DNA of 64,000 nt, from positions 192,534-256,533 of the forward strand of contig NIVC01000932.1 in the NCBI GenBank assembly GCA_002269645.1. The letters run 5' to 3'. The notes beneath the pieces are model-generated. The model had not been told where the DNA came from and did not search any database. It saw nothing but the letters and a program-made list of their open reading frames with translations. This stretch comes from Macrostomum lignano (Eukaryota). The position numbers and the translations under genes are program-made. Positions 18,519 through 64,000 of this stretch are shown here, in pieces. The number at the start of each line of letters is the position of its first letter. The stretch's first letter is position 1.

Positions 18519-19730
<1,212 letters not shown>

Positions 19731-20524
19731 CCTATCGAGGTCTAAACAGCAATTCAGAAAGGAAGGGTAGCCTGCCAAAGAGAATAATTTAAAGCTACGG
19801 TAGTACAAAATGCAGAGCAGATATTGCCTACGGGCGGCTGAACCCGAGGACGCCAGCTGCCTTCAAGCCATACTGTAATAAAAGCGTCCGAAAATTTCCT
19901 CTAATGACTGTTGGGTCAGCTCCGAGCGTCCATTTTCCATGCATCTGCCTCCATGCTCGATAATGCGCAGCCGAATTCTCTCTCTATGTGTGCTCTGCAG
20001 TCTACCCTTAGAATCAGCTGCTGCTGCTGCTGCTGCCGCTGCAGGAATGGATACAAATTCCCAACAACCGCAAACCCCTCTTCCATCGCTTCACTCTTCA
20101 CTAACCTACTGAGCGGAAAGCTAGTAATAGATTTTGTACAGACTGTGCTAGCGCAGAGAGTGGGGGGGGGAAGGCAGTCCCCCGGGAAGAAATAGGAAGG
20201 GGGGAATTAGCTAATTGGACTGACTGGCCGGAGAATACAGAGGAGATAGGTGCGCTCGGGTGGATTTAACAGATTGAGAAGTTCTCGCCAGTTTACTGCC
20301 AGCTATTTCCCCTCTGTCACCGGGACCCATCGTCTTCGCCCTACGGCTCAGCGCTCGCATAGGCAGCCAAGATAGCTGCTCGAATAGTCATACGAAGAAA
20401 TCCTCTAGAGGATTTTAATCCCCCTTTTCCTCCCTCTTATTTCATGGCACGTCTGTCGCCTCTACTGCACCCTCTAAATATATTCCAGAAGGAAATGGAT
20501 GGGGGAATGGCAGGACAGGGCTCA

Positions 20525-29400: not shown

Positions 29401-29953
29401 AAGGGGTGGAGGCGAGATTGAGGAGCCAATCAGAAGGCAGCGAGGGAGAGATATAAGAATAACAAGCTTGAACTAGGCAGAGAGGGAGAGAGATAAGAAT
29501 AACAAGCTTGAACTAGGCAGAGAGGGAGAGAGATAAGAATAACAAGCTTGAACTAGGCAGCGAGGGAGAGAGATAAGAATAACAAGCTTGAACTAGCAGC
29601 GAGGGAGAGAGATAAGAATAACAAGCTTGAACTAGGCAGCGAGGGAGAGAGATAAGAATAACAAGCTTGAACTAGGCAGCGAGGGAGAGAGATAAGAATA
29701 ACAAGCTTGAACTAGGCAGAGAGGGAGAGAGATAAGAATAACAAGCTTGAACTAGGCAGCGAGGGAGAGAGATAAGAATAACAAGCTTGAACTAGGCAGA
29801 GAGGGAGAGAGATAAGAATAACAAGCTTGAACTAGGCAGCGAGGGAGAGAGATAAGAATAACAAGCTTGAACTAGGCAGCGAGGGAGAGAGATAAGAATA
29901 ACAAGCTTGAACTAGGCAGCGAGGGAGAGAGATAAGAATAACAAGCTTGAACT

Positions 29954-30052
<99 letters not shown>

Positions 30053-39800: not shown

Positions 39801-42023
39801 ATGATAGACACCTGACTCTCCCACAGTCTCTGGCCAAGATAGACACCTGAATGACTCTCCCACGTCTCTGGCCATGATAGACACCTGACTCTCCCACAGT
39901 CTCTGGCCAAGATAGACACCTGAATGACTCTCCCACAGTCTCTGGCCAAGATAGACACCTGAATGACTCTCCCACAGTCTCTGGCCAAGATAGACACTTT
40001 AATGACTCTTCACAGTCTCTGGCCAAGATAGACACTTGAATGACTCTCCCACAGTCTCTGGCCATGATAGACACCTGAATGACTCTCCCACGTCTCTGGC
40101 CATGATAGACACCTGACTCTCCCACAGTCTCTGGCCAAGATAGACACCTGAATGACTCTCCCACAGTCTCTGGCCAAGATATACAACGGAATGACTCTCC
40201 CACAGTCTCTGGCCATGATAGACACCTGAATGACTCTCCCACGTCTCTGGCCATGATAGACACCTGACTCTCCCACAGTCTCTGGCCAAGATAGACACCT
40301 GAATGACTCTCCCACGTCTCTGGCCATGATAGACACCTGACTCTCCCACAGTCTCTGGCCAAGATAGACACCTGAATGACTCTCCCACGTCTCTGGCCAT
40401 GATAGACACCTGACTCTCCCACAGTCTCTGGCCAAGATAGACACCTGAATGACTCTCCCACGTCTCTGGCCATGATAGACACCTGACTCTCCCACAGTCT
40501 CTGGCCAAGATAGACACCTGAATGACTCTCCCACAGTCTCTGGCCAAGATAGACACCTGAATGACTCTCCCACAGTCTCTGGCCATGAAAGACACCTGAA
40601 TGACTCTCTCACAGTCTCCGGCATAGATAGACACCTGACTCTCTCACAGTCTCCGGCATAGATAGACACCTGACTCTCCCACAGTCTCTGGCCAAGATAG
40701 ACACCTGAATGACTCTCTCACAGTCTCCGGCCAAGATAGACACCTGAATGACTCTCTCACAGTCTCCGGCCATGAAAGACACCTGAATGACTCTCTCACA
40801 GTCTCCGGCATAGATAGACACCTGACTCTCTCACAGTCTCTGGCCAAGATAGACACCTGACTCTCCTACAGTCTCTGTCTCGGACTGCTCAGCCATGCCA
40901 TGAAATGCTCGAACCTATTCCAGCCGCCGCAAACTTGCTCAGCTTCAGCCCGTAGCTCCGATAGCTGAACGGCAGGGTCAACGCGTGCAGCCGGTCCACC
41001 ACCAGAGCCACCATAAGCAGCATGGCGAATCCGTTGGCAAAGTTCATGACGAACCCCCAGAACTTGCAGAACCAGTCCGCCGGGTACATTGGGAACTGGA
41101 ACTCGCCGCGGGTGAACCGGAAAGTGCCGCGATCAACCTAATACGGCGGTGGTTTTTCGTCGATAGAAGATTTATGAAAGATTAAAATCGGATTAGCGAT
41201 TGGGGATTAGCGATTGGGGATTAGGGATTGAGGATTAGCGATTAGGCATTAGGAATTAAGGATTAGGGACGGAGGATTAGCGATTGTGAATTAGCGATTC
41301 GGGAACAGCGATTGAGGATTAGCGATTCGGGAACAGGGATAGAGGATTATCTATTGGAGATTAGGGACTGGGAATTAGCGACGGGGGATTAGGGATAGAG
41401 GATTAGCGATTGAGGAATAGAGACTGAGGAAGAGTGATTCGGTATTAGGGATTCGGAATTAGGGACTGAGGATTAATGATTCGGGATAGAGGATTAGCGA
41501 TTGGGGATTAGAGACAGAGGACTAGCGATTGAGGAATAGGGATAGAGGATTAGCGATTAGGGACTACCGATTGAGGATTAGCAATTGGGAAATTAGCGAT
41601 GGGGGGAGTAAATTTTTGATGCCGGGGATTAGGCGTTCGACACCGGAGATCAGAATCGAGGATTAAGGATCAAAGACTTGGGGATGGTACCGTCTGCGAG
41701 AAGAACTGGTGCGACACGATCAGCGCGTTGGTGGGCAGCAGGCAGCAGATGTACACGTGCGGCTTCGACCAACGCGACCTCGAGCGCAGCATCAGGACGA
41801 AGGCGACGAGGTTGCCAAGCAGGCCAACCAGAAAGCAAGTCGGCACCACAATCAGCGCCACCCAGTTGTTGATCTCCTCCAGTATGAGGATCCGGTTGAA
41901 GAGCTCCCGGTACCAGGCGTCGCGGCGAATGGCGGACTGGAGCAGCCGAAAGAACATGGCGTAGCGATTGGGCATCCCGCCGCTGCTACCGCCGCCGCCG
42001 CCTCCAGTGCTGTTGCTCTCCAT
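36855..42023 (-). CDS. Orphan rhodopsin-class (peptide-receptor-like) GPCR, 3 exons, 416 aa
   Basis: Exons (minus) 42023-41691, 41137-40915, 37549-36855 (phases 0,1). TM1 with GLLGN, TM3 WFCKF...VDRL, TM4 ending in P, ECL2 Cys, TM5, basic ICL3, TM6 YMVTLVP, TM7 NWIIY. Confidence 0.85.
37590..38195. repeat. 21-bp minisatellite in GPCR intron 2
   Basis: Unit ctattctatcatgactcaagc. Confidence 0.95.
38680..40875. repeat. 34/35/39-bp minisatellite, ~2.2 kb, in GPCR intron 2
   Basis: Unit gatagacacctgactctctcacagtctctggccaa with an aatg insertion variant. Confidence 0.97.
41190..41635. repeat. Degenerate GATTAG-type repeat in GPCR intron 1
   Basis: Recurrent gaggattagcgatt and gggattaggg motifs. 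Confidence 0.8.
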
Positions 42024-42164
42024 GCTTACGGAATTCAAAGTGTTTCTATTCTCGACTCACTGTCGGGAAAGTGATCGGGGTTTTATTTATAGAGATTCTG
42101 ACTGCGTGGCGGCAGCCAATTAGAGATGGCTTTTGCTCTATGTTCGGATTGGGCAATCTCAGCC

Positions 42165-42680
42165 AGTGGGATGGTCAGGGTTTAAGCTGAGATGGTCATG
42201 GTTTAGAGTGAGATGGTCATGGTTTAGAGGGAGATGGTCATGGTTTAGAGGGAGATGGTCATGGTTTAGAGTGAGATGGTCTTGGTTTAGAGTGAGATGG
42301 TCTTGGTTTAGAGTGAGATGGTCATGGTTTAGGGTGAGATGGTCATGGTTTAGAGGGAGATGGTCATGGTTTAGGGTGAGATGGTCATGGCTTACAGTGA
42401 GATGGTCATGGTTTAGGCTGAGATGGTCACAGTTTAGGGTGAGATGGTCACAGTTTAGGGGGAGATAGTCATGGCTTACAGTGAGATGGTCATGGTTTAG
42501 GGTGAGATGGTCATTGTTTAGGGTGAGATGGTCATGGTTTAGGGTGAGATGGTCATGGTTACGCTGAGATGGGCATGGTTTAGGGGGAGATAGTCACAGT
42601 TTAGGATGAGATGGTCGAAATTTAGGGTGAGATGGTCACAGTTTAGAGTGGTTCATGGGTTTCTAGAGTGAGATGGTCAT
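42165..42680. repeat. 21-bp minisatellite upstream of the GPCR start
   Basis: Unit gagtgagatggtcatggttta. Confidence 0.93.
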
Positions 42681-44301: not shown

Positions 44302-47300
44302 ATGGATTCTTCCACGGCAACCAGCGCTGGATCCAGCGGCGTCGCAAAAATTGCGGTGAGTCTGTGGGGATCAGATTTTGAATCCGGTCAGTCTCTCTAG
44401 GGCAATGCCGCTTCCCATTCACTGGGGCAGCCAAGGTACGATCGAGATTTCACCGATTGAATGAAGCCGTGTAGGCCATTATACCCTATGACGTCACTGT
44501 GTTCAACACCTACTTTGTCATGACGTCACACAACTTTTTATTGCGAGAAACAAGAGAAGACTGTGAGGAGAGACACAGCGGAGAGACACAGCGGAGAGAC
44601 ACACACTGGAGAGACACAGTGGAGAGACACAGCGAAGAGACACGGTGGAGAGACACAATGGAGAGACACACTGGAGAGACACACTAGAGAGACACAGCGG
44701 AGAGACACAGTGGAGAGACACAGTGGAGAGACACAGCGGAGAGACACAGTGAAGAGACACAGTGGAGAGACACAGCGGAGAGACACAGTGGAGAGACACA
44801 AGGAAGAGACACAGTGGAGAGACACAGTGGAGAGACACAGCGGAGAGACACACACTGGAGAGACACAGTGGAGAGACACAGCGAAGAGACAGTGGAGAGA
44901 CACAAGGAAGAGACACAGCGGAGAGACACAGTGGAGAGACACAGCGGAGAGACACAGCGGAGAGACACAGCGGAGAGACACAGCAAAGAGACACAGCGGA
45001 GAGACACACAGCGGAGAGACACACACTGGAGAGACACAGTGGAGAGACACAGCGAAGAGACACGGTGGAGAGACACAATGGAGAGACACACTGGAGAGAC
45101 ACACTAGAGAGACACAGCGGAGAGACACAGTGGAGAGACACAGTGGAGAGACACAGTGGAGAGACACAGTGGAGAGACACAGCGGAGAGACACAGTGGAG
45201 AGACACAAGGAAGAGACACAGTGGAGAGACACAGTGGAGAGACACAGCGGAGAGACACACACTGGAGAGACACAGTGGAGAGACACAGCGAAGAGACAGT
45301 GGAGAGACACAAGGAAGAGACACAGCGGAGAGACACAGTGGAGAGACACAGCGGAGAGACACAGCGGAGAGACACAGCGGAGAGACACAGCAAAGAGACA
45401 CAGCGGAGAGACACAGCGGAGAGACACAGCAAAGAGACACAGCGGAGAGACACACTGGAGAGACACAGTGGAGAGACACAGCAAAGAGACACAGCGGAGA
45501 GACACACAGCGGAGAGACACAGCAAAGATACACAGCGGAGAGACACACAGCGGAGAGACACAGCAAAGAGGGTTGTCGTGCGTTTTACAACCCATGAGGG
45601 CCAACCCCCAAGGCACAGAGAGTTACATGCCTGACAATTAGAAAGTCAGGGCCGTTGTACAAGGTGCACCCTGTGTAGGTCGCATCTGCGCGCTTAGGAG
45701 TCTGCTGAATGAGCAGAATTGCCTTAAATTTTAAAATTACAATCAAAAAGTACTTTTAACCACAACGACCTTGTTACAGCAGCAGCAGCAGACAAACCCA
45801 TCCGAAGAGCAGCAATTGCAGCAGCAACAACAGCAGCCGCAGACATCACTGGATGCAGGCCCCAAGAGGCTGCACATCAGCAATATTCCGTTCAAATTCA
45901 GGGAGACCGACTTGCGACAGTTGCTCGGGGTGAGGAGCCTAGCAACTGACTGTGCACTTTAGCACACAGCAAAGTCCCTTTTTATAATCTCAATATACAT
46001 ATGTTTGTCCTTGATTGTCTCCCTGCATCTTCACCCACTCTCCTTGATTGTCTCCCTGCATCTCTACCTCTCTCTCCTTGATTGTCGCCCTGCATCTCTA
46101 CCTCTCTCTCCTTGATTGTCTCCCTGCATCTCTACCTCTCTCTCCTTGACTGTCTCCCTGCATCTCTACCTCTCTCTCCTTGACTGTCTCTCTGCATCTC
46201 TACCTCTCTCTCCTTGATTGTCGCCCTGCATCTCTACCTCTCTCTCCTTGATTGTAGCCCTGCATCTCTACCTCTCTCTCCTTGACTGTCTCCCTGCATC
46301 TCTACCTCTCTCTCCTTGACTGTCTCCCTGCATCTCTACCTCTCTCTCCTTGACTGTCTCTCTGCATCTCTACCTCTCTCTCCTTGACTGTCTCTCTGCA
46401 TCTCTACCTCTCTCTCCTTGATTGTCGCCCTGCATCTCTACCTCTCTCTCCTTGACTGTCTCTCTGCATCTCTACCTCTCTCTCCTTGACTGTCTCCCTG
46501 CATCTCTACCTCTCTCTCCTTGACTGTCTCTCTGCATCTCTACCTCTCTCTCCTTGACTGTCTCTCTGCATCTCTACCTCTCTCTCCTTGATTGTCGCCC
46601 TGCATCTCTACCTCTCTCTCCATGATTGTCTCCCTGCATCTCTACCTCTCTCTCCTTGATTGTCTCCCTGCATCTCTACCTCTCTCTCCTTGACTGTCTC
46701 CCTGCATCTCTACCTCTCTCTCCTTGATTGTCTCCCTGAATCTCTACCTCTCTCTCCTTGATTGTCTCCCTGAATCTCTACCTCTCTCTCCTTGATTGTC
46801 GCCCTGCATCTCTACCTCTCTCTCCTTGATTGTCTCCCTGCATCTCTACCAGTCTCTCCTGATCACTAATGACGTTTATCTCTTTCTAAAATAGAGTCAG
46901 ATTTAGAACTTTAATCTACTGTTCTGTTTGTTTAAATGGCAGCCATTCGGCCAGATCCTGGACGTGGAGATCATATTTAATGAGCGCGGCTCCAAGGTGA
47001 GATATTGCAAATTATAAAAAAGCGATTATAAAATATATTTCTTCGTACTACTCTAAGCCGGCAGTAACTCTTTAGAAAACACACTATATATTAAAAGTTT
47101 CACATTTTCTCTAGGCTCACAGGGACTTATGCCAGCCAGTTGCCAGGTTGTTAACGCTGCATTTTCTTTAAACAGATTCGCCTCTTGCACTGGCATCCGA
47201 TTGTCTTGCTTGATGAAAGAGATTCGACTTTCTTTTTGGTCAGGAACTTTGCCTGTCATTTGCCACTGTCAGCAAGATCTGCTGTTTATTGTCAGAGCTA

Positions 47301-47417
47301 CCAACGAAGATAGACTGTACCTGCTTGGGTCCATAGTCTTGGGGACTGTTGCTGTATCTTTTGCTTCTGGTATTTCAGTCTCAAGGTTAGCTTTAGGTTG
47401 ATAGATAGATAGATAGG

Positions 47418-47458
<41 letters not shown>

Positions 47459-47459
47459 C

Positions 47460-47508
<49 letters not shown>

Positions 47509-47531
47509 GTAGATAGATAGATAGATAGATG

Positions 47532-47590
<59 letters not shown>

Positions 47591-47591
47591 C

Positions 47592-47635
<44 letters not shown>

Positions 47636-50537
47636 TAGATAGATAGATAGATATATAGATAGATATAGATCGATAGATATTATTAGATACAAAAAGACAA
47701 GCAATCTAGTGTCTATGGGTGTGACCCAGGTAGTCTACGAGCAAGTGTCTATGGCTATAACTGTGACACAGTCTGAGAAACCCAGATTTTTCTAGAAGTA
47801 TTCTTGTCGCTGCAGCAATTATTCAATGCATTGTTTGTTTGGTTTCGAGAGATGTAAGAAGTGCAGCAGCATTTTGTACATTTCTTTAAGTTTGCCTGCA
47901 GCCACAGAATTGGACATTGCACAGCATGTCGGTCAGTCGAACAGTTGATGAAATGTCGGTCATGATGTACTTTATAAACTCAACAAGCAACTTATAGAAG
48001 AAGCGGCGAATTTATTTCCCGGCTTCAATCGCTGACGGCATGAAAGTTGTTTTTGCGTTTTTCTTGACTTCTTGCTTCTTCTTTTGAAAGAAGCCGACTA
48101 CGCTAGCGCGAGTTTGCCGAGAAAAAAAACATTGGTTTGCTTTTAAATTAACAACAACGAAAAAATATGTTTGTGGTGACGATTATCATAACTCTTAATT
48201 CTACTCATGCGTTCCATCTGCACGTCAGGGATTCGGATTTGTCACTTTTGCCGAGTCTGCAGATGCTGAAAAGGCCAGGGAGAAGCTCAATGGCACTCTG
48301 GTGGAAGGCCGCAAGATTGAGGTGAGACCTGCGACTGGGGGACACTGAGGGACACTGAGGGACACTAAGGAACACTAAGGGACACTGAGGGACACTGAGG
48401 GACACTGAGGGACACTGAGGGACATTGAGGGACACTGAGGGACACTGAGGGACACTGAGGGACACTGAGGGACACTGAGGGACACTGAGGGACATTGAGG
48501 GACACTGAGGGACACTGAGGGACACTGAGGGACACTGAGGGACACTGAGGGACATTGAGAGACATTGAGAGACACTGAGGGACACTGAGGGACATTGAGG
48601 GACACTGAGGGACACTGAGGGACACTGAGGGACATTGAGGGACACTGAGGGACACTGAGGGACACTGAGGGACATTGAGAGACATTGAGGGACACTGAGA
48701 GACATTGAGAGACATTGAGGGACACTGAGGGACACTGAGGGACATTGAGGGACACTGAGGGACACTGAGGGACATTGAGAGACATTGAGGGACACTGAGG
48801 GACACTGAGGGACATTGAGGGACACTGAGGGACATTGAGGGACACTGAAAGACACTGTAGGGAGACTGAGAGATGTTAAAGGACACTGAGGGATATTAAA
48901 GGACACTGAGGGATATTAAAGGACAATGAGGGACACTGTAGGAACACTAAAGGGCACTAAAGGACACTGAGGGACACTAAAGGACACTGAGGGACACTAA
49001 AGGACACTGAGGGATATTAAAGGACACTGAGGGATATTAAAGGACAATGAGGGACACTGTAGGGACACTAAAGGGCACTAAAGGACACTGAGGGACACTA
49101 AAGGACACTGAGGGACACTATAAAGAGCATTGAGGGATACTATAAAGAATACTGAGGGACACTAAAGGACACTGATTAACACTAAAGGTCACTGATTGAC
49201 ACTAAAGGTCACTGAGGGACACTGAGGGAAACTGAGGGACACTGAGGGACACTGAGGGACACTATAAAGAGCATTGAGGGATACTATAAAGAATACTGAG
49301 GGACACTAAAGGACACTGATTAACACTAAAGATCACTGATTGGCACTAAAGGTCACTGAGGGACACTGAGGGAAACTGAGGGACACTGAGGGACACTGAG
49401 GGACACTAAAGGACACTGAGGGACACTAAATGTCACTGAGGGACACTAAAGGAGACAGAAGGCTTATTTGCAAACTATTCCTTGGCCCCCAATCGCTTGC
49501 CCTACAGGTGAACAATGCCACGGCCCGGGTGATGACAAAGAAAAAAGATTCCTCACCGAATCAGCTGAGAGGTGAGAGATGAGTATTTGATGAATATTCT
49601 AGTCCAATTTATTCTAATTTAATCTAATGTAATTCAATCTGATCCAATCTAATCTAATTCATCCTAATCTAATCCAATCCAATTCAATCTAATCTAATTT
49701 AATCTAATCTAGTCCAATCTTATCTAATCCAATCTAAATTAATCTAATCTAACCCAACCTAATCAACCACACCTGATCTAATTTAATCTAATGTAATCTA
49801 ATCTAGTCTAATCTAATTTGATCCAATCTAATCTAATCTAACCTAATATAATCCGATGTAATCTAATCCAATCTAATCTAATTCAATCTAATATAATCCC
49901 ACCCAATCTAATCTGATATACTCTAATCTAATCTAATCTAGTCTGATCTAATCTAATCTAATCTAATCTAATACTATCTAATCTGATCCGCCGCCTCTCC
50001 CCAGCCCTTCCCGGCCTCCGCAACCGTCAGTTGGCCCTGCCGCCCGCCTTCCAAGCTCTGGCGGCGGCGGCAGCAGCTGGAGGCTTTGGCGCCGGTTTGG
50101 GCGGCGCCTTCGGCGGAGTCGCCTTCCCGCCGCAGCTGCTGTATCCGCTGGCCACCTCGGCGGCACTCATCGACCCCTCGTTGGCGTTCGCGGATCCGGC
50201 ACTGCTGGCCAGCCACCACCTGCAGCAGCAGCAGCAGCAGCAGCCGCCGCCACCGCAGCAGCACCAGCTGTCGACACTGCCGACGCTGCCGCCGATGCCC
50301 GCTGCGGCGCAGCTGACGACCTCCCTGGCCGCGGGATTTCCGACCGCCGCCGATCAGTTCGCCGCTGCCGGCATCGCCGCCGCCGCAGCCGCCGCCGCTA
50401 GAGAAGCTTCGGCCGCCGCTGCCGGTCTGAACTCCGCCTACGTGAACTCCAGCCCGACCGTCTACCGGGGTGCCCAGGGCTCGCTGCAGCATCACCATCA
50501 TCATCAGAGATTCGCGCCCTACTCCAGGCCTTACTGA
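44302..50537 (+). CDS. RBFOX: Rbfox (Fox-1 family) RNA-binding protein, 6 exons
   Basis: Exons 44302-44355 (first exon less certain), 45780-45929, 46943-46996, 48229-48321, 49508-49571, 50005-50537. RRM: [47 protein letters not shown]...[21 protein letters not shown]; Ala/Gln-rich tail ending RFAPYSRPY. Confidence 0.93.
44560..45570. repeat. 13-bp minisatellite in Rbfox intron 1
   Basis: Unit agcggagagacac or agtggagagacac. Confidence 0.96.
46010..46862. repeat. 34-bp pyrimidine-rich minisatellite in Rbfox intron 2
   Basis: Unit ctgcatctctacctctctctccttgattgtctcc. Confidence 0.96.
47399..47685. repeat. (GATA)n microsatellite in Rbfox intron 3
   Basis: Tetranucleotide run. Confidence 0.97.
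48337..49460. repeat. 10-bp minisatellite in Rbfox intron 4
   Basis: Unit gggacactga, starting 15 nt after the donor site. Confidence 0.96.
49600..49985. repeat. (AATCT)n degenerate pentamer array in Rbfox intron 5
   Basis: ctaatctaatctaat running up to ~20 nt before the acceptor at 50003-50004. Confidence 0.92.
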
Positions 50538-50580
50538 TCCTGATTGACCTTGGCGACTCCGCTGACTGGGTTGGCTGAAT

Positions 50581-51902
50581 TGGTGACGGAGTGAGTTGGT
50601 GACGGAGTGAGTTGGTGACGTTGTGAGATGGTGACGTTGTGAGTTGGTGACGGAGTGAGATGGTGACGGAGTGAGTTGGTGACGGAGTGAGTTGGTGACG
50701 GAGTGAGTTGGTAACGGAGTGAGTTGGTGACGGAGTGAGTTGGTGGCGGAGTGAGTTGGTGACGGAGTGAGATGGTGACGTTGTGAGTTGGTGACGGAGT
50801 GAGTTGGTGACGGAGTGAATTGGTGACGGAGTGAGTTGGTGGCGGAGTGAGTTGGTGACGGAGTGAGTTGGTGACGTTGTGAGTTGGTGACGGAGTGAGT
50901 TGGTAACGGAGTGAGTTGGTGACGGAGTGAGTTAGTGGCGGAGTGAGTTGGTGACGGAGTGAGATGGTGACGTTGTGAGTTGGTGACGGAGTGAGTTGAT
51001 GACGGAGTGAATTGGTGACGGAGTGAGTTGGTGGCGGAGTGAGTTGGTGACGGAGTGAGTTGGTGACGTTGTGAGTTGGTGACGGAGTGAGTTGGTAACG
51101 GAGTGAGTTGGTGACGGAGTGAGTTAGTGGCGGAGTGAGTTGGTGACGGAGTGAGATGGTGACGTTGTGAGTTGGTGACGGAGTGAGTTGATGACGGAGT
51201 GAATTGGTGACGGAGTGAGTTGGTGGCGGAGTGAGTTGGTGACGTTGTGAGTTGGTGACGGAGTGAGTTAGTGACGGAGTGAGTTGGTGACGGAGTGAGT
51301 TGGTGACGGAGTGAGATGGTAACGGAGTGAGTTGATGACGGAGTGAGTTGGTGACGGTGTGAGATGGTGACGGAGTGAGATGGTGACGTTGTGAGATGGT
51401 GACGGAGTGAGTTGGTGACGTTGTGAGTTGGTGACGGAGTGAGATGGTGACGGAGTGAGTTGGTAACGGAGTGAGTTGGTGACGGAGTGAGATGGTGACG
51501 GAGTGAGTTGGTGACGGAGTGAGATGGTGACGGAGTGAGATGGTGACGGAGTGAGTTGGTGACGGAGTGAGATGATGACGTTGTGAGTTGGTGACGTTGT
51601 GAGTTGGTGACGGAGTGAGTTGGTGACGTTGTGAGTTGGTGACGTTGTGAGTTGGTGACGTTGTGAGTTTGTGACGGAGTGAGTTGGTGACGGAGTGAGT
51701 TGGTGACGGAGTGAGTTGGTGACGGAGTGAGTTGGTGACGGAGTGAGTTGGTGACGGAGTGAGATGGTGACGGAGTGAGATGGTGACGGAGTGAGATGGT
51801 GACGGAGTGAGTTGGTGACGGAGTGAGTTGGTGACGGAGTGAGATGGTGACGGAGTGAGATGGTGACGGAGTGAGTTGGTGACGGAGTGAGTTGGTGACG
51901 GA
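50581..51902. repeat. 16-bp minisatellite just downstream of the Rbfox stop codon
   Basis: Unit gacggagtgagttggt; source of the 473-aa periodic ORF. Confidence 0.97.
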
Positions 51903-52782
51903 GAGAGCTTCCCTTTTCTCATTTTACGATAATTCGGTAAAACCGCATACATTACTTAAAAAAACTTCTTTTCACTTTGTTTAATTCGTTTCATTGTTAA
52001 ACCCTTGGCGTCTCATGAAAATGATTTTCAAAAACATTACAAAATAACTCTCTGATAAAGTCTTTAGCCTCACACTGTAACAGACAGTATTAGTTGTGCC
52101 TAATGTACTTTGCAACTTGTGCTGTACATGCTAAGACGTGGCTCTGGCACCGCAGCTCACTGACTTTGTGTTAATTAGCATGCACTGTCTGCCTAGTTGG
52201 AAAAATAAATATCGTTTACAATACTCATACGTACAGCCAGCAGTGATCGGCTTTTATTGCCTCATTGTTAGATTGTTTCCTTTCGAGGTTACTCAGTGAC
52301 TAAGCTGAGCTGTGCTGCGTTCGGCTGTGCTCACACGCTTGGGGCAAAAGCCAATTGATCCACCAAGGAGACCAGGGAGCAGATCATGGACTGCCAGTTC
52401 CTGCTCAACCCCCACCCCTCGGGATTCTACAGTTTGTTTAATTTTGTTAAACAAACAAAACTTTACTTTCTAAACCTTACTGATTAGTGGTCTCGTTTTT
52501 AACTCTGGATAAACTCAATTCACCTTGACGGGTGAAATGTTTAAAAATATTGCATGCGCTTTCAGTATGAAAATAGTACATTTTTGAACATGCAGATTTC
52601 AAGGGAAGAGTTTGTCAGTCCAGGTTCTGGTCCCAGGCATTCTTGGCCCCTGCTCAACCAACCGGGCAATAGCGCCCACGCACTGGACAAAAGTTGAGGT
52701 TTTTTCTCAAGCCACAACTGACTGCTTCAAACCAAGAAGTCAGCCGCTGTCCGGTCTTCAGTAAAAAAGAGGCAGAAATTTG

Positions 52783-55581: not shown

Positions 55582-57549
<1,968 letters not shown>

Positions 57550-57774
57550 GGAGTTGGGTAACCTGATCATCTGCAGGGAGGATGAGGGATTACGGACGCT
57601 TCGTCACCGGGCCTGGATTCCGGCTCGAAGCGCCACTTGAGCTGCGCCGCTCGATCAAAAGCCACGACAAAAAGGAAAATCACTCGCCGCTACGCTTTTC
57701 AAAACCTATGACAGAATGATGCAAAATCTTAAAATTATTCGAATAAAATTTCTGCGACAAGCATCAAATCTTAA

Positions 57775-58030
57775 TAAATGTGTCCCATGAAAGACATAAA
57801 ATCTCAATAAGTGTGTCCGAGACAGACATCAAATCTTAAAAGGTGTGTCCGAGACAGGTATCAAATCTGAATAAAGGTGTCCGAGACGGACATCAAATCT
57901 TAAAAAGTGTGTCCGAGACAGGTATCAAATCTGAATAAATGTGTCCGAGATAGAAATCAATCTTAAAAAGTGTGTCCGAGACAGGTATAAAATCTCAATG
58001 TGTCCGAGACAGGCATCAAATCTGAATACA
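57775..58030. repeat. ~32-bp minisatellite
   Basis: Recurrent tgtgtccgagacaggcatcaaatcttaaaaag. Confidence 0.88.
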
Positions 58031-58169
58031 TGTAACTGTGTCCGGGACAGGTAGTTTACAGGTAGACAAGGACAGGCAAAATGAATTTGTGCCGCGCCCC
58101 CACGCCCCAGAGGCACCCCGTCCATACGCCGATGGTTTCGAGAGGCTGCAACTCCGTCAACGCAGTCCT

Positions 58170-58372
58170 GATTGGCCAGGGGGACCCTTGAGCTCAAGGA
58201 GCTCAAGCTGTAAAACTTTCACCATTGGGCAACACTAGCCAACAGGCAGGCAAGCAGGCGCTCTCTCAACAGGTTTCTTAACAATTCAAATTTGAGCTTC
58301 AAGAATCTGATAGTAGCTGGCAGACATTAGCTGCTGTGCGAGTATCTTAACACCTGGGCAATTAAGGTAAGT
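58170..58372 (+). promoter_or_regulatory. Candidate promoter and non-coding first exon upstream of VAChT
   Basis: Reverse CCAAT boxes (ATTGG at 58171 and 58224) and a perfect donor AAG|GTAAGT at 58367; splice acceptors precede the VAChT ATG at 60543 and 60576. Confidence 0.35.
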
Positions 58373-60709
58373 AATTATTTTGAAATTCCGAACGATTTCA
58401 TTGAGACGGCTTTACAAATAGGACTCTCCATGCACTTCAATATAATGAATATAGTTCTTGCAATTTTGTCATTCTTTACCTGAGTGAATATTTTTCTTTT
58501 CTGAGTATTGAATCAGAGCATACTCGAATTTTGTCTGATATGCGTTGACGTTGGTATGCGTTCGATATCAAACTTTGCGGTGCACAGAGACCTTGTTTTT
58601 CAATATTTAGGTTTATTTTTTGCAAAAAATCCCAAGCTAAAGGTAAAGTTCGTATGTGAGCTTCTCCCGCCACTTGACTTTCTAATCGTCAGGCATGTGT
58701 AGCTTCGTACACTTTCTGTGCCGTGAAACTGCTCAAAGGTTTGCCACCGCTCGTTTTTCATCCAAGAAGCGAACGGCGACCCTTGGCAGCCGCTAGACCA
58801 CATATTCATTTTCGAATATTCATTCGCATTTAATCTATCGTATATAAAACCACAACAGCCTTGACTGCGGAATTGCTGGCTAAGGAAGCAAACAAAGAAA
58901 AGTAGCTCCAGCATCTCTGCTGCCCTCGTGCTTCTCTGCATCCCCCGGGCGTCTGAGCCCCATCAGCCCCCCCTCGCCCTTCCCTCAACGTAACCAACGC
59001 ACACGGCTCCTTCGTCGCATGCAGCAGCTGGCCAGCCTCCCATGAAACTCCCCAAAAAACTCTCCAAGCCCCCAATCGCCTCAGACCATGAGAATTCTGC
59101 AGCCCACCTTTCGCTACCAATATTGGCTGGCCTGAAGCTGGACAACTGGCGGACTGCAGGGGCAGTGCTAGGCTTCAGCCTACTTTACTTTCATTCCGTA
59201 ATCCAAACTGATTTGATCGATTCGTTCCTCATCGTGGCCCAAATTTCCATAACCCCGCGCTTAGGCGGTGCAGCCCAGTGTTGCCGAAGAACAGCCCGCT
59301 ACTTACAGCAGCCAGATCGCCAACAGGATTTGACAGATTGAACTGCTGTTCTCTTCTCCCTGACAAAGAGAACCTCAGGTTTGTTTAAAAATCGCCCCCC
59401 CCCAACCGCTGACCAGCTGGCGAGGGCGGGAGGAAATTCCGGGAGAAACAATTCCGCTTTTTCCACCCTGTTGAGAAGAGCTCAGGCCCGCGCTTCTTCA
59501 CCTTGGTGGACCATCCGCTTTGGGTGGGCATGCAGGGGGCAGGGATGAAGAATGAGCATCTCAGCTCCCTTCCTCGCTTCCTCTGTCCCACCCTCGCCTT
59601 TTCCTCCTCATTTTTCTCCTATTCTTCTTTTGCATAGAGAGAGGGGGGAGGGGATGCGGGAGCAGGGCGGGGGCTACAAAGCAAAAAACAGCGAGAATTC
59701 TTTAGGCAAACAGCAGACGCTCTTCGCCTGCCGTCCTTCGCGCGCTCAGTTCTCTCGCCAGCCTCTCCAGCCCCTTCGCCTAAATAGCTCACCGCCCTGC
59801 TTCACTCAACAGCCCGGCCCCCTCTTCTCAAGGCTTATAATAGGCCCTATTGATTTGCTAAGTTGCATTTCCTCTGGGGGCTGGGACACGATACCTGCTT
59901 CCACCTTGCTTTTGTCAAGTACTCTGTCGTCATCCACCCCAGTCCCCTAGCAAGCAGGCCTGCATATTCACACCGTGCCGTCTGCATTGGATCCAAATTG
60001 TACCACCGCTCCCTCCTCCCACCAAACCTGCAGCGGGCCTGAGACAGAGGGGCACGTGAGCTGCCGAAGAAAGAAAGTGTAGATTGGATGGCCTGGCAGG
60101 CAGACTTGAGACAGCAATGGGCTTGGCTGAGACTTGAGACAGCAATGGGCTTGGCTGAGGGGGGGCGTGGCGGGCCAGCCATCTTTGGCTGGAAAATAAT
60201 GAGAAGGGAACATGCAGATTAGTACGTGCACCCGCAATGCCTCGCCTAGGTCGATGCGTTGTTTGAACCACTTCAGGCTCCTCTTGTGCGCGCGTGTCTG
60301 TGTGACTGACTGTCGGAGTAGGGAGCGGAGCGAGAAACATTGAGATGTAGAAGTCTGGTGACAATCTTGATAGTAATAACATTTTATCACTTTCAAATGA
60401 TTCAACTCTGCATCAATCTTTATAAAGTACATGATGTACTTTGCTGACACCCAATGATGCTGCTTAGTCATCCATTTCAACCAGAATAAAAGCGATTTCT
60501 TTATTAGTCATTTCAAGCGTTGCTTTATCGATTTGTGTTGCAGGCTAAGCGCGCGTCTTGCCGTCTCTCTACTCAGGTGCAGCAAGTTGCGGCCAATCAG
60601 GAATATCAGAGTAACTGGTCCTCTAGCATCCACAGCGCTACTATCTAGACACAGCTAAGCGACAGATCTTGACACAGGCAATTTCACAGAAGACTTCAAA
60701 CCCAACACA

Positions 60710-62306
60710 ATGTGGGCCTATATTCAGTCAGTGATCGAGGAGCCGCAGTCGCAGCGGAAGCTGGTCCTCATCATAGTCTGCATCGCGCTGCTACTGGACA
60801 ACATGCTCTACATGGTGATCGTGCCAATCATTCCGCACTACCTGACCAACGTCACTAACGAGCTGCGCAATCGCGAGGGCTACAACGAGACGACAACCAG
60901 CAACTACACAGAGATGCGCAACCACACGCTGTACCATCACTACAACCACACAAGCCACCTCAGGTTTCGCTGGCTGGTGGCGGAGAACGCCGAGCCCAAG
61001 ATTGGCTACCTGTTTGCCAGCAAGGCGGCCGTCCAGCTGCTTGTGAACCCCATCAGCGGGACAATCATAGATCGAATGGGCTACGACCGGCCCATGATGT
61101 TCGGCCTCTCCATTATCTGCCTGTCGACAACCGTGTTTGCGTTCGGCAAGTCCTACAATGTGATGTTCCTGGCGCGGTCTGCAGGGCCTCGGCTCCGCGT
61201 TCGCCGACACCTCCGGCCTGGCAATGATTGCCGACCGGTTCACCGAGGAGGCCGAGCGCACCAAGTCTCTGGGATCGCGCTGGCCTTCATCTCGTTCGGC
61301 TCGCTGGTCGCGCCCCCGTTCGGCGGCATTCTGTATCAGTACTTCGGCAAGGAGCTGCCCTTCATGGTACTGGCGCTCATCGCTCTCATCGACGGCTGCC
61401 TGATGCTCGTTGTTATGAAACCTGTGCGAGCGAGCGGCGCACCCAGAAGGCTATCGGAGAGCTGCCGAAGGGGACGCCGTTCCACCGACTGATACGCGAT
61501 CCGTACATCGCCACCTGCGCCGGCGCCCTGGCCATGGCGAACGTCTCGCTGGCCTTCCTGGAGCCAACAATTTCAATCTGGATGCAGAAGCGGCTGAATT
61601 CCAGCAACTCCGAGCAGGGACTTGTCTGGCTGCCCTCGTTCTTTCCCCACGTGCTCGGCGTATACAGCACGGTGTACCTGGCTAGACGCTTCCCCAAGTA
61701 TCAGTGGCTGATGGCGGCCATCGGCCTGGCCATGGAGGGCATCTCTTGCCTGTTTGTGCCATTCTGCACCGACTTCGTCTCGCTGATGATCCCGATCTGT
61801 CTGCTGTGCTACGGCATCGCCTTGATCGACACGGCCCTGCTGCCGACTCTGGCCTACGTGGTTGACCACCGCTACGCGTCCGTGTACGGCTCCGTGTACG
61901 CCATCGCGGACCTGTCCTACAGCCTGGCGTACGCAGTCGGCCCAGTGGTGGCCGGGCAGCTGGTGACCGCCATCGGATTCACCGGGATGAACATCGTCAT
62001 CTTTCTTACTAACATTCTGTACTCGCCGGTGCTCATGGTGCTGAGGAATGTCTACAAGTACGAAGGATTCGAGCCGCCGAAGGAAGGCGTCGAGGCTTTC
62101 ACTGACGCTGGCGGCGGAGCCAGCGGCGGCGGTCTCGGCGGCGACGTTGGCATTCAAGCCGCGCCGACACCGCAGTACCGGACCTACATGCTCAACGGCG
62201 GCGAGGGCGGCGCTGCCAAGCCGCTGGACAGCAAAGCGTCGCCGCCTGATATGAACGCCGGTTTCGTTGCCAACTTCCCGGATGTTCAGCAGCTGCCGCC
62301 CGCCGC

Positions 62307-62337
<31 letters not shown>

Positions 62338-62409
62338 AGCAGCCGGGCTGGACGAATCGCGGGCCACTGGAGTGAGGCTGCGCGGAATCGAGGGCCGACA
62401 GTTCCTTAG
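60710..62409 (+). CDS. SLC18A3: Vesicular acetylcholine transporter, intronless; frame broken by small deletions near 61179, 61272, 61431 and possibly ~62305
   Basis: [118 protein letters not shown]; the missing [27 protein letters not shown] lies in the alternate frame. True stop may be 62375 if a fourth shift exists. Confidence 0.95.
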
Positions 62410-63637
62410 ACAAAGGAATGAAATATTTTTTAACGTTCATAGCAGTACAGACCATTTGATATGACTTTATCATATTTTTAGTGTTGTCATGCTGCCTATA
62501 GATGTGAACTTTAGCTATTTTGCTTGTCAAAATTGAATTGCGAAATTTAGGTGCGCGTCAAGTTTACTGGTATCTGTTTTAGTCTTGATGGCATCAATAG
62601 CTTTTCTATTCTGTGTTAAATGCTTTGCCGAAGATTAGTCTCTTTTTCTAGCTGTGTCGTCTGTTTTTTATCAACATTTGGGAACTTGTGAACAGCATAA
62701 TAACTCCTGTAAGCTGTTTTATATAGCACTGGCGCACCTGTTCGACTTCTATCCGAGCTGTTTTGAGATGCGCTTCTGTTGTTACTTGATTGCTTAACTC
62801 CTTTTTAAATTTGATTTAAGTCTGTAGGACTGGCAAGCGCAGCTAGCGGTCCTTGAACTACTCCTCATTGCATTGAAAAGGTTGTTTGAATAAATCGATT
62901 TTCTAGTAAAATTCTTAGAATTCACGTCGCTCTCCTGCACACCTGTTGTTTACTTGTCACGCGCGCACCTGCAGTATCCACCTTACCTTAGCGCTATTGT
63001 GTTTCTTCTTGTTGCTTACTAAAATTCGTGCTCGAGTCTTATTCGTTATTCTATATTTAAGCAAAATGTTTTAGAATTTTAATGTTCTTGATACTGTAGC
63101 TGTTGTTTTATTTTTATTAATTTTTCTTTTGCTTCCTAAAACAAAATCCTCGATAACAAAATTGTTTTCAAAGTAAACAGATGAGCTTGTTCTAATATTT
63201 CATAAATCTTTCTGATTGACCTATGTACGTACCTTTTGATTCAGTACACCAGATGGAGAGCCGTGAGCTGTATCGATAGCTATTTAAGAATTGCATTGCA
63301 TTGCTCGAGTTTCTTATTTAATACAAATAGCTAAAGTGTATTTTTAGCATCATTTCAAGTTTGGGCTTAGTTTGTATTTCCCTGAGGAATGAGTTTGCTG
63401 AGCCACAGAAGATCCCAGCCGACTCCCCCACATCGCATTTGTCCCGCGACCTTTTACCCAGCTGGAGCCCAGTCGGTTTCCTTTGTATTCGAAGTTCCCA
63501 GGAGCCTCTAAGGTTTCAGGTTGAATCTGTGTTGTCTTTTAATTTCACTTTCGAACCATTGAAATAGCATTTAATTTCATTCCAGAGCCTTCTTCTTCCA
63601 GTGTAAACAGAAACAGCAACCAAATCAAATCTGCGAC

Positions 63638-63718
63638 ATGCCATCCGAACAAGTGCGCGAGTTCGTTCGCCGCATCTCATCGAAAGATTCGGACGAATAT
63701 CCCAACTGGGATCCGACA
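63638..63718 (+). CDS. CHAT: Probable first coding exon of choline acetyltransferase (rest beyond window)
   Basis: Acceptors ttccag at 63585 and 63601, ATG 63638, MPSEQVREFVRRISSKDSDEYPNWDPT, phase-0 donor GTAAGC at 63719. Identity inferred from position 1.2 kb downstream of an intronless VAChT on the same strand; the diagnostic LPKLPVP motif is not within the window. Confidence 0.45.
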
Positions 63719-63799
63719 GTAAGCACAATTGTATTGGTGGGATTTGAATTAATCATTTAATATGTATATATAGCTTGAAGTTTAAGGTCGAAAGTCAAA

Positions 63800-64000
63800 A
63801 CACGTACACTGATCTCACCTGTACATTTGTCCCTACGTGTACATTTATTCCATCTGTGCATTTATCCACGTGTCCACGTGTAAATTGATCCCACCTGTAC
63901 ATTGCATCCTATTGTAAATTAATCCACCTTCCATTTATCCAACGTGTAAATGATCCCACCTGTACATTGATCCTATTTGTAAATTAATCCCACCTTCCAT
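63800..64000. repeat. Degenerate tandem repeat in the intron after the candidate ChAT exon
   Basis: Recurrent gatcccacctgtacattg, tgtaaattaatcc and catttatcca blocks. Confidence 0.7.

What the first reader, a model, noticed from the sequence alone, without database searches (positions are those of the whole stretch)
58170..64000. Nested cholinergic gene locus (VAChT inside the first intron of ChAT) in a probable flatworm
Seen: intronless VAChT preceded by acceptors (60543, 60576), candidate upstream non-coding exons with donors at 58367 and 59379, AATAAA at 62889, then an acceptor-ATG-donor exon at 63638-63718. Established: in C. elegans (unc-17/cha-1), Drosophila and mammals VAChT lies in ChAT intron 1 and both share a 5' exon through alternative splicing. 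Inference: the same two-genes-one-promoter system operates here.
Basis: partly seen in the sequence, partly recalled or inferred. Interest (0 to 1): 0.7.

Follow-up and report, generated by a model that had tools for sequence, protein, structure and literature searches.

The report
Flatworm VAChT–ChAT cholinergic gene locus
The end of this window holds the two linked genes that make and package acetylcholine (VAChT followed by the first coding exon of ChAT) from a Macrostomum-like flatworm; this is the arrangement already known from worms, flies and mammals, and the VAChT reading frame is broken by four small deletions that are probably assembly errors.

Summary
60710-62375 (+) is an intronless VAChT: 513 bits to human VAChT against 315 to VMAT2, and 73% identical to Macrostomum lignano VAChT. 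63638-63718 (+) is the first coding mini-exon of ChAT. Its 27-codon peptide is 80% identical to the exon at the same position in M. lignano, where the LPKLPVP exon follows 0.6 kb later, and it matches the N-termini of annotated flatworm ChATs.

Two corrections. The VAChT CDS is not one ORF: it has four frame-breaking net deletions, at 61177, 61271, 61429 and within 62257-62335. Amino-acid constraint is intact, so these are most likely consensus indel errors rather than decay. The 59379 'donor' is no better than chance; the one at 58367 is a perfect consensus site.

'VAChT nested in ChAT intron 1 with a shared 5' exon' is plausible but unproven. In this window, M. lignano and Schistosoma bovis, both start codons sit just after 3' splice sites. 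Both mRNAs therefore receive a spliced 5' end, either from a common upstream exon or from a trans-spliced leader, which is common in Macrostomum.

This is a new member of a known kind, of low to moderate interest.

The parts
58167..58177 (-). Exact GGCCAATCAGG (extended CCAAT / NF-Y-type motif), about 190 nt upstream of the consensus donor. Candidate promoter element for a non-coding first exon.
   Evidence: three exact copies in the window (26291, 58167, 60591), where about 0.03 exact matches are expected for an 11-mer in 128 kb. The flanks are unrelated, and M. lignano locus L001 has no CCAATCAG. A promoter role is inferred.
58178..58366 (+). Candidate non-coding 5' exon. Its start is unknown but must lie after the minisatellite that ends at 58028. 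It ends at the perfect donor AAG|GTAAGT.
   Evidence: the donor is in the top 0.06% of GT sites; it lies in a 298-nt ATG-free run (58132-58430), which is only weak support because 25% of the window lies in such runs. There is no transcript evidence and no conservation.
60544..60709 (+). VAChT 5' leader downstream of the 3' splice sites (AG ending at 60543 and 60576). It contains no upstream ATG and holds a second GGCCAATCAGG at 60591-60601.
   Evidence: Analogous acceptors lie about 170 nt before the VAChT ATG in M. lignano and 7 nt before it in S. bovis.
60710..62375 (+). VAChT (SLC18A3) coding sequence. It has no introns, and four frame-breaking net deletions at 61177 (-2), 61271 (-1), 61429 (-1) and within 62257-62335 (-1). 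The stop is TGA 62373-62375.
   Evidence: MFS_1, 1e-40; 513 bits to human VAChT against 315 to VMAT2, colinear across the breaks; 73% to M. lignano; 1 deviation in 137 invariant columns; positions of the breaks; the C-terminus aligns in frame +1.
62376..62894 (+). VAChT 3' UTR up to the only AATAAA (62889-62894) in the intergenic stretch.
   Evidence: Use as the poly(A) signal is inferred.
63586..63718 (+). ChAT first coding mini-exon. The alternative acceptors end at 63585 and 63601, the ATG is at 63638, the exon has 27 codons (MPSEQVREFVRRISSKDSDEYPNWDPT), and the phase-0 donor ACA|GTAAGC follows 63718.
   Evidence: 80% identity to M. lignano exon L001:15059-15139, which has the same length and phase; matches S. 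bovis L002:13592-13666; the same peptide heads annotated flatworm ChATs directly before (L)PKLPVP. Fasciola ChAT scores 585 bits to ChAT against 476 to CrAT.
63719..64000 (+). Start of the ChAT intron after the mini-exon. It contains a 33/65-bp tandem repeat at 63874-64000. The LPKLPVP exon lies beyond the end of the window.
   Evidence: (no further ChAT exon in the window).

Best explanation
This is the cholinergic gene locus of a Macrostomum-related flatworm.

Shown:
- An intronless VAChT gene lies at 60710-62375.
- The first coding mini-exon of ChAT (63638-63718) follows 1.26 kb downstream on the same strand.
- The rest of ChAT lies beyond the end of the window.
- This linkage and exon design also occur in M. 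lignano and Schistosoma bovis.

Inferred from sequence and comparison: both start codons lie in exons that begin at 3' splice sites, so both mRNAs acquire their 5' ends by splicing.

Inferred only, no RNA evidence: the most likely arrangement is the canonical one. A non-coding exon upstream of VAChT, best candidate ending at 58366 (AAG|GTAAGT), would be spliced either to 60544/60577 to give VAChT mRNA or to 63586/63602 to give ChAT mRNA. That would place VAChT inside ChAT's first intron and let one promoter drive both genes in cholinergic neurons.

The four frame breaks in VAChT are most likely consensus indel errors of the assembly, not a dead gene.
For: Gene identities:
- VAChT scores 513 bits against 315 for VMAT2. 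It has Pfam MFS_1 and is 73% identical to M. lignano VAChT.
- The ChAT exon is 80% identical to the orthologous 27-codon, phase-0 exon of M. lignano.
- In M. lignano that exon is followed by the RPLPKLPVP exon, and the gene is called as PF00755.
- The same peptide heads ChATs of Fasciola, Dicrocoelium, Cryptocotyle, Echinococcus, Hydatigera, Trichobilharzia and Protopolystoma.
- The Fasciola protein is clearly ChAT, 585 bits against 476 for CrAT.

Linkage:
- M. lignano has VAChT then ChAT 3.3 kb apart on the same strand. S. bovis has them 2 kb apart.
- Paragonimus and a bivalve have adjacent locus tags for the two genes.

Spliced 5' ends:
- Acceptors precede both ATGs here, in M. lignano and in S. 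bovis.

Upstream exon:
- One outstanding consensus donor lies 2.34 kb upstream of the VAChT ATG here (top 0.06% of GT sites).
- One lies 1.58 kb upstream in M. lignano (top 0.1%).
- An exact CCAAT-type 11-mer sits 190 nt before the donor.

Frame breaks as errors:
- The joined protein deviates at 1 of 137 invariant columns, against 0-4 in functional orthologues.
- No piece contains an in-frame stop.
- All breaks are deletions.
- The three located precisely lie within 8 nt of CGCG/GCGC, against 19% of CDS positions.
Against: - No transcript data, so neither the shared exon nor true nesting is shown.
- The candidate upstream exon has no sequence similarity to M. lignano.
- A donor that strong within 2.7 kb has roughly a 10% chance of occurring randomly.
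- The CCAAT motif is not present in the M. lignano locus, and COE/EBF sites are not enriched.
- The M. lignano ChAT CDS model starts exactly at an acceptor (L001:15017) although the frame stays open further upstream. That is what an SL-trimmed, trans-spliced transcript looks like.
- A second CCAAT motif 109 nt before the VAChT ATG could mark a separate VAChT promoter.
- Against the error reading of the frame breaks: two transposon ORFs of 1.3-1.4 kb are unbroken, so the indel rate is not uniformly high. An independent test in the neighbouring alpha2delta gene was inconclusive.
Confidence: 0.55

Rival explanations
1. The locus and linkage are the same, but the 5' ends come from spliced-leader trans-splicing rather than a shared cis exon. 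The acceptors at 60543/60576 and 63585/63601 would receive the SL. ChAT would be either the downstream gene of an operon-like VAChT-ChAT transcription unit, still with one promoter, or an independently transcribed gene with an outron. VAChT would then not lie inside a ChAT intron.
For: [quoted passage not shown] The SL acceptor motif is [T/C]TNCAG.
- TTGCAG (60543) and TTCCAG (63585, 63601) fit that motif.
- The M. lignano ChAT CDS model begins one base after an AG acceptor while the ORF is still open upstream.
- The AATAAA-to-acceptor distance here is about 0.7 kb, within the 1-kb repeat-adjusted operon threshold of that paper.
Against: - Cis and trans acceptors share the CAG motif, so the fit does not discriminate between them.
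- A perfect consensus donor sits upstream of VAChT in both this window and M. lignano. Conrad et al. 1993, as cited in PMC8629364, state that an acceptor is predominantly trans-spliced when no cis donor lies upstream of it.
- In every animal where the locus has been dissected (C. elegans, Drosophila, mammals; established knowledge), a shared cis exon is used.
- Neuronal genes are not the class enriched for SL trans-splicing in M. lignano; conserved and stem-cell genes are (PMC8629364).
Confidence: 0.3
2. The genes are linked but independently transcribed. VAChT would use a proximal promoter near 60591 and ChAT a promoter in the 1.2-kb AT-rich spacer. The arrangement would be conserved synteny only, without nesting or shared transcription.
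For: - An exact CCAAT-type 11-mer lies 109 nt before the VAChT ATG.
- Mammalian loci also have VAChT-specific and ChAT-specific internal promoters (established knowledge).
- Nothing upstream is conserved with M. lignano.
Against: - Strong acceptors lie immediately upstream of both ATGs in three flatworms, only 7 and 9 nt away in S. bovis. The coding exons are therefore not first exons.
- The M. lignano ChAT model starts at an acceptor.
- No strong donor lies in 62377-63585 that could end a ChAT-specific first exon; the best is in the top 2.5%.
Confidence: 0.1
3. The four frameshifts are real. This VAChT copy would be a young pseudogene, for example one paralogue in a duplicated Macrostomum-type genome, and the functional locus would lie elsewhere. 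This question is independent of the three transcription models above.
For: - Four frame breaks in 1.67 kb, while two transposon ORFs of similar length in the same window are unbroken.
- The alpha2delta control was inconclusive.
Against: - There is no excess of changes at invariant residues: 1 in 137, like functional orthologues.
- No piece contains a nonsense codon.
- With typical neutral indel-to-substitution ratios (1:5 to 1:20; established knowledge), four indels predict about 4-15 hits at invariant columns and 1-3 stops.
- All the lesions are deletions in CpG-dense or repeat contexts.
- The adjacent ChAT exon is intact.
Confidence: 0.12

Closest known systems
C. elegans unc-17 / cha-1 cholinergic locus (Alfonso et al. 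1994; from my own knowledge)
   Same: VAChT lies upstream of the ChAT coding exons on the same strand. Both coding regions start after 3' splice sites. The co-expression logic would be the same.
   Different: In C. elegans the shared 5' non-coding exon, itself SL1 trans-spliced, is shown by cDNA. Here the shared exon is only a candidate. C. elegans unc-17 has introns, whereas this VAChT CDS has none.
Mammalian SLC18A3 inside CHAT intron 1, and the Drosophila VAChT/ChAT locus
   Same: An intronless VAChT ORF lies directly upstream of the first ChAT coding exon in the same orientation. The bioRxiv preprint 10.1101/2021.03.29.437568 states that the structure is conserved from invertebrates to mammals.
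   Different: Mammals have several alternative ChAT 5' exons (R, N, M) and VAChT-specific promoters. Here no exon upstream of VAChT is proven. The ChAT N-terminal mini-exon peptide (KEFVRRISS..YPxWD) is a spiralian feature.
Macrostomum lignano locus NIVC01000284.1:429291-450997 (L001)
   Same: - Closest relative: VAChT 73% identical (77.6% over the core columns) and ChAT exon 1 80% identical, with identical length and phase.
- VAChT is intronless and ChAT lies downstream on the same strand.
- Acceptors precede both ATGs, and there is one outstanding donor upstream of VAChT.
   Different: The M. lignano VAChT is one intact 568-aa ORF. Its spacer is 3.3 kb against 1.26 kb here. No non-coding sequence is alignable, and it has no CCAATCAG motif.
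Schistosoma bovis locus OX104102.1:49935522-49957141 (L002)
   Same: An intronless VAChT is followed 2 kb downstream by a PF00755 gene whose first exon is a mini-exon (MSHPIKEFVRRLSNLDIERYPEWDLS|GTAAGT). Strong acceptors sit 7 and 9 nt before the two ATGs.
   Different: It is more distant (63% identity in VAChT) and AT-rich, and its leaders between acceptor and ATG are much shorter.

Membership tests
VAChT (SLC18A3), vesicular amine transporter branch of the MFS | Full-length similarity closer to VAChT than to VMAT1/2 or SLC18B1 | tested here: met
   513 bits to human VAChT, 315 to VMAT2, 304 to VMAT1 and 37 to SLC18B1; the top 120 hits are VAChTs.
VAChT (SLC18A3), vesicular amine transporter branch of the MFS | 12-TM MFS fold with the conserved TM4, TM10 and TM11 aspartate motifs ([17 protein letters not shown], YAIADxSYS) | tested here: met
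   MFS_1 at 1e-40 over residues 24-413. One search's alignment shows [27 protein letters not shown] and [13 protein letters not shown] retained. The functional role of these aspartates is from my own knowledge.
VAChT (SLC18A3), vesicular amine transporter branch of the MFS | An intact open reading frame (a functional gene) | tested here: not met
   there are four frame breaks in the sequence as given. The constraint test and the sequence context suggest assembly error, but that cannot be proven without reads.
ChAT (choline O-acetyltransferase, Pfam PF00755 Carn_acyltransf) | The exon is orthologous to the first coding exon of ChAT genes | tested here: met
   the 27-codon peptide matches the M. 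lignano and S. bovis exons and the N-termini of annotated flatworm ChATs directly ahead of (L)PKLPVP.
ChAT (choline O-acetyltransferase, Pfam PF00755 Carn_acyltransf) | Acyltransferase domain closer to ChAT than to carnitine acetyltransferase (catalytic His, VDN motif) | not testable with these tools
   The domain lies beyond the end of the window. Tested only in relatives: Fasciola ChAT with the same N-terminus scores 585 against 476 bits and has RVDNIR. The three visible M. lignano exons alone do not discriminate, 98.6 against 92.8 bits.
Cholinergic gene locus (VAChT nested in ChAT) | VAChT and ChAT adjacent on the same strand, with VAChT upstream of the first ChAT coding exon | tested here: met
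   The same layout occurs in M. lignano and S. bovis.
Cholinergic gene locus (VAChT nested in ChAT) | VAChT coding region without introns | tested here: met
   it is colinear with the human protein and with the intronless M. lignano CDS. The only interruptions are 1-2-nt gaps, not introns.
Cholinergic gene locus (VAChT nested in ChAT) | A ChAT exon upstream of VAChT, so that VAChT lies within a ChAT intron | not testable with these tools
   There are only candidates: a perfect donor at 58367 and acceptors before the ChAT ATG. No RNA data were available, and the Logan contig L003 was unspliced.
Cholinergic gene locus (VAChT nested in ChAT) | A common 5' exon or promoter shared by both mRNAs | not testable with these tools
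   Inferred from the acceptors before both ATGs in three flatworms. SL trans-splicing is an equally valid reading.
SL trans-spliced operon (flatworm type) | The downstream gene carries an SL acceptor within about 1 kb (repeat-adjusted) of the upstream gene's 3' end, and SL-containing reads are present | tested here: inconclusive
   The acceptor motif and the 0.7-kb AATAAA-to-acceptor distance fit. SL reads could not be examined.

The most novel reading that the evidence does not exclude
In macrostomorph flatworms the ancient VAChT-ChAT pairing may be expressed not by alternative cis-splicing from a shared exon but as an operon-like unit. In that unit the downstream ChAT mini-exon, and perhaps VAChT too, would receive a trans-spliced leader. 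This would be a different molecular solution to co-expressing the two cholinergic genes from one promoter.
Probability: 0.3. Interest if true: 0.5.

Novelty: new member of a known kind. Interest (0 to 1): 0.27.

Why it matters
The VAChT/ChAT pairing is a textbook case of two functionally coupled genes kept together for hundreds of millions of years. This window, together with M. lignano and S. bovis, shows that flatworms keep the layout, down to a conserved 26-27-codon ChAT mini-exon and splice acceptors directly before both start codons. I found no paper describing this for flatworms, although it is visible in public annotations.

Practical uses:
- It gives a compact candidate cholinergic-neuron promoter for Macrostomum-type transgenesis.
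- It offers a clean test of whether co-expression uses cis-splicing or SL trans-splicing.
- It flags frame-breaking indels in this assembly that will corrupt gene models.

Tried and rejected
- **M. lignano exon 1+2 peptide in the word-indexed search.** It found only the Protopolystoma fragment, not the M. lignano protein.
- **ChAT against CrAT from the first three M. lignano exons.** Not discriminating, 98.6 against 92.8 bits.
- **Conserved non-coding blocks.** blastn of window 54-64 kb against L001, L002 and L004 found only CDS. Smith-Waterman of the two candidate first exons scored below the shuffles.
- **COE/EBF motif TCCCNNGGGA.** Depleted, not enriched: 7 against 19.6 expected.
- **Bacterial-type promoter and terminator scan.** At chance level and irrelevant for a eukaryote.
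- **Logan contig L003 as a possible VAChT transcript.** It is colinear with the genome, so it gives no splice information.
- **Logan ChAT transcripts.** They turned out to be molluscan or annelid, not flatworm.
- **uATG depletion.** The runs of 298, 253 and 249 nt are not individually unusual.
- **Independent frameshift check in the alpha2delta gene at about 31405.** Inconclusive.
- **M. lignano SL sequence.** Absent from the window.
- **NJ tree with Biopython.** Timed out and was replaced by a bootstrap nearest-neighbour test.

Full report
**1. The observation**

The region was read directly.
- A perfect consensus donor AAG|GTAAGT, with the intron starting at 58367.
- CAG|GT at 59379.
- AG acceptors ending at 60543 and 60576.
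- An ATG at 60710 opening a VAChT-like frame.
- One AATAAA at 62889, the only one between VAChT and the next exon.
- Acceptors ending at 63585 and 63601.
- An ATG at 63638, and a donor ACA|GTAAGC after 63718.

The ORF list splits it into 60710..61492 and 61228..62409. Three-frame translation shows the protein running in frame 0, then +1, then 0, then +2. The M. lignano C-terminus (…[25 protein letters not shown]) matches a fifth segment in frame +1 (…[22 protein letters not shown]). The true stop is therefore TGA 62373-62375.

**2. VAChT identity**

The joined pieces match Pfam MFS_1 at 1e-40. They score 513 bits against human VAChT structures (9kkn, 8xtw), compared with 315 bits for VMAT2 and 304 for VMAT1. 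The alignment runs colinearly through every frame break. The TM4, TM10 and TM11 aspartate motifs ([27 protein letters not shown]) are retained.

In the 5.8-billion-protein search the best hit is Macrostomum lignano, at 73% identity and 97% coverage. Other flatworms follow at 57-65%, then nemerteans, molluscs and annelids. Over 479 core columns the window is 77.6% identical to M. lignano and at most 68% to anything else. The two are reciprocal nearest neighbours in 200 of 200 bootstraps. 'Probable flatworm' is therefore right. The source is a macrostomorph-like species, not M. lignano itself. No protein from the window's own genome appeared in that search.

**3. The frame breaks**

A nucleotide alignment to the intact, intronless M. 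lignano CDS places the frame-breaking gaps as follows:
- 61177, -2 nt (GCGCG^GTCTGCAGGG).
- 61271, -1 nt (TCTCT^GGGATCGCG).
- 61429, -1 nt (GTGCG^AGCGAGCGG).
- A net -1 somewhere in the poorly conserved tail or CCG repeat, 62257-62335.

All four are deletions, and no piece contains a nonsense codon. At the 137 columns invariant in 28 other VAChTs, the window deviates once (a conservative I to F). Functional orthologues deviate 0-4 times.

With ordinary neutral indel-to-substitution ratios (my own knowledge, 1:5 to 1:20), four indels should come with about 4-15 hits at those columns and 1-3 stop codons. The three breaks that can be placed precisely all lie within 8 nt of a CGCG/GCGC motif, which is true of only 19% of CDS positions (p about 0.007, noticed post hoc). 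This pattern fits context-specific consensus errors in a long-read assembly better than gene decay.

Two points count against that reading. Two transposon ORFs in the window (1,290 and 1,398 nt) are unbroken, so the error rate is not uniformly high. A possible fifth break in the neighbouring alpha2delta gene, near 31405, could not be confirmed: joining the frames extended the Pfam alignment but added no score. I put a real pseudogene at about 0.12.

**4. The last exon is ChAT exon 1**

The M. lignano contig (L001, NIVC01000284.1) has a gene called as PF00755 (Carn_acyltransf) starting 3.3 kb downstream of VAChT on the same strand. The window peptide MPSEQVREFVRRISSKDSDEYPNWDPT aligns to L001:15059-15139, MPVHPVKEFVRRISSKDLDEYPNWDLS, at 80% identity and E = 9e-12 within the locus. 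That exon is also 27 codons long, also phase 0, and also followed by GTAAGT.

The same peptide, joined directly to (L)PKLPVP, heads several other proteins:
- A Protopolystoma acyltransferase fragment.
- The annotated ChATs of Fasciola, Dicrocoelium, Cryptocotyle, Hydatigera, Echinococcus and Trichobilharzia.
- In diverged form, nemertean, mollusc and annelid ChATs.

The Fasciola protein is unambiguously ChAT, at 585 bits against 476 for carnitine acetyltransferase, and it carries RVDNIR. S. bovis has the same mini-exon at L002:13592-13666, 2 kb downstream of its intronless VAChT. No further ChAT exon lies in the window, because only 282 nt of the intron are present. The acyltransferase domain itself is therefore untested here.

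**5. Nesting and a shared promoter**

The comparison shows that both start codons sit in exons that begin at 3' splice sites.

| Species | Acceptor to VAChT ATG | Acceptor to ChAT ATG |
|---|---|---|
| This window | 167 or 134 nt | 53 or 37 nt |
| M. lignano | about 170 nt | 44 nt |
| S. bovis | 7 nt | 9 nt |

Neither coding exon can be a first exon, so both mRNAs get a spliced 5' end. Two sources are possible.

(a) A common upstream cis exon, as in the canonical locus.
- The window has one outstanding donor 2.34 kb upstream of VAChT, in the top 0.06% of GT sites. The chance of such a site in this 2.7-kb stretch is roughly 10%.
- M. lignano has one 1.58 kb upstream, in the top 0.1%.
- The window's donor is preceded at 190 nt by an exact GGCCAATCAGG. 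This 11-mer occurs three times in the window against about 0.03 exact matches expected.
- The candidate exon must start after the 32-bp minisatellite that ends at 58028.

(b) A trans-spliced leader.
[quoted passage not shown] The acceptor motif is [T/C]TNCAG (PMC8629364), which the window's acceptors fit.
- The M. lignano ChAT CDS model begins one base after an AG acceptor although the frame is open further upstream. That is how an SL-trimmed transcript would look.

Nothing upstream is conserved at the sequence level. The CCAAT motif is absent from the M. lignano locus, COE sites are not enriched, and uATG depletion is weak. The 59379 'donor' is at chance level, although my matrix scores the validated ChAT exon-1 donor no higher.

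My estimates are 0.55 for the shared cis exon, 0.3 for SL or operon-type expression, and 0.1 for independent promoters. A second GGCCAATCAGG 109 nt before the VAChT ATG may mark an additional VAChT-proximal promoter, as mammals have.

**6. Comparison with known systems, and novelty**

The layout matches the cholinergic gene locus of C. elegans, Drosophila and mammals. A preprint on Bombyx states that the structure is conserved from invertebrates to mammals (10.1101/2021.03.29.437568). Public annotations already show adjacency in other spiralians: Paragonimus EG68_03224/03225 and Sinanodonta ACJMK2_034449/034450, and in Lingula, Capitella, Owenia and Tubulanus the two genes' contigs have identical lengths, which suggests a shared contig. 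I found no paper describing the locus in flatworms.

It is therefore a new member of a known kind. The linkage and exon design are shown, and the nesting is inferred. The one feature with some novelty potential is the possibility of SL-mediated rather than cis-spliced co-expression.

**7. Verdict**

The coordinates and gene identities are right, but the VAChT ORF is broken and one donor is not significant.
It is a flatworm cholinergic locus, but nesting and a shared promoter remain unproven.
- Interest is 0.27.

Noticed in passing
window 24397-31794 (+): A neighbouring gene for a voltage-gated calcium-channel alpha2delta subunit. VWA_N lies at 24397-25026 (2e-21) and VGCC_alpha2 at 31399-31794 (8e-8). 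VWA-like and Cache-like exons are visible at about 25053-26414, 29060-29275 and 30087-30395.
   Followed up: partly
window 31399-31411: Two stop-free + strand frames of the alpha2delta gene overlap here (…RDSLYERTAL* and …ALASSSDSSLTVLTAPSG…), next to a GCGC motif. This looks like a fifth 1-nt deletion. Joining them extends the Pfam alignment (profile 54-251) but adds no score, so the result is inconclusive.
   Followed up: partly
window 26291-26301 (-), 58167-58177 (-), 60591-60601 (+): There are three exact copies of GGCCAATCAGG (extended CCAAT / NF-Y-type box) with unrelated flanks, where about 0.03 exact matches are expected by chance. The 8-mer CCAATCAG occurs 6 times against about 2 expected. 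These are possible promoter marks, and the first copy lies inside the alpha2delta gene region.
   Followed up: partly
window 5001-6290 (+): An intact 430-codon ORF of a mariner/Tc1-type DDE transposase, with HTH_48, HTH_32, DDE_3 and Transposase_1 domains.
   Followed up: no
window 56192-57589 (-): A 5'-truncated non-LTR retrotransposon fragment: the C-terminal half of the reverse transcriptase plus a weak RNase H match, as a 466-codon open frame. It ends about 0.5 kb before the candidate cholinergic promoter region.
   Followed up: no
window 57762-58028; 60102-60157; 63874-64000: Local tandem repeats occur around the locus: a 32-bp minisatellite of 8.5 copies just upstream of the candidate first exon, a perfect 28-bp duplication in the putative intron, and a 33/65-bp repeat in the ChAT intron.
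   Followed up: yes
window 456-1357, 18427-19789, 33544-35227, 37641-40717, 42124-42593, 44521-45645, 47272-47734, 48208-48915, 49977-51955: Minisatellite arrays are unusually abundant. They produce long spurious ORFs in several frames on both strands and a few spurious weak Pfam hits.
   Followed up: no
L001:15059-15139; L002:13589-13666; proteins P0271-P0277, P0279, P0306, P0311: The ChAT N-terminal peptide (…[VI][KR]E[FY]V[KR]R[IV][AS]S.D.E.[YF]P.W[DN]L..PLPKLPVP) is conserved across Spiralia (flatworms, nemerteans, molluscs, annelids). In the three flatworm loci examined it is encoded by its own 26-27-codon mini-exon. Its function is unknown.
   Followed up: partly
L001:15014-15017: The M. 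lignano ChAT CDS model starts at a non-ATG codon one base after an AG acceptor, although the frame is open further upstream. This suggests a transcript 5' end created by SL trans-splicing or an unassembled upstream exon.
   Followed up: partly
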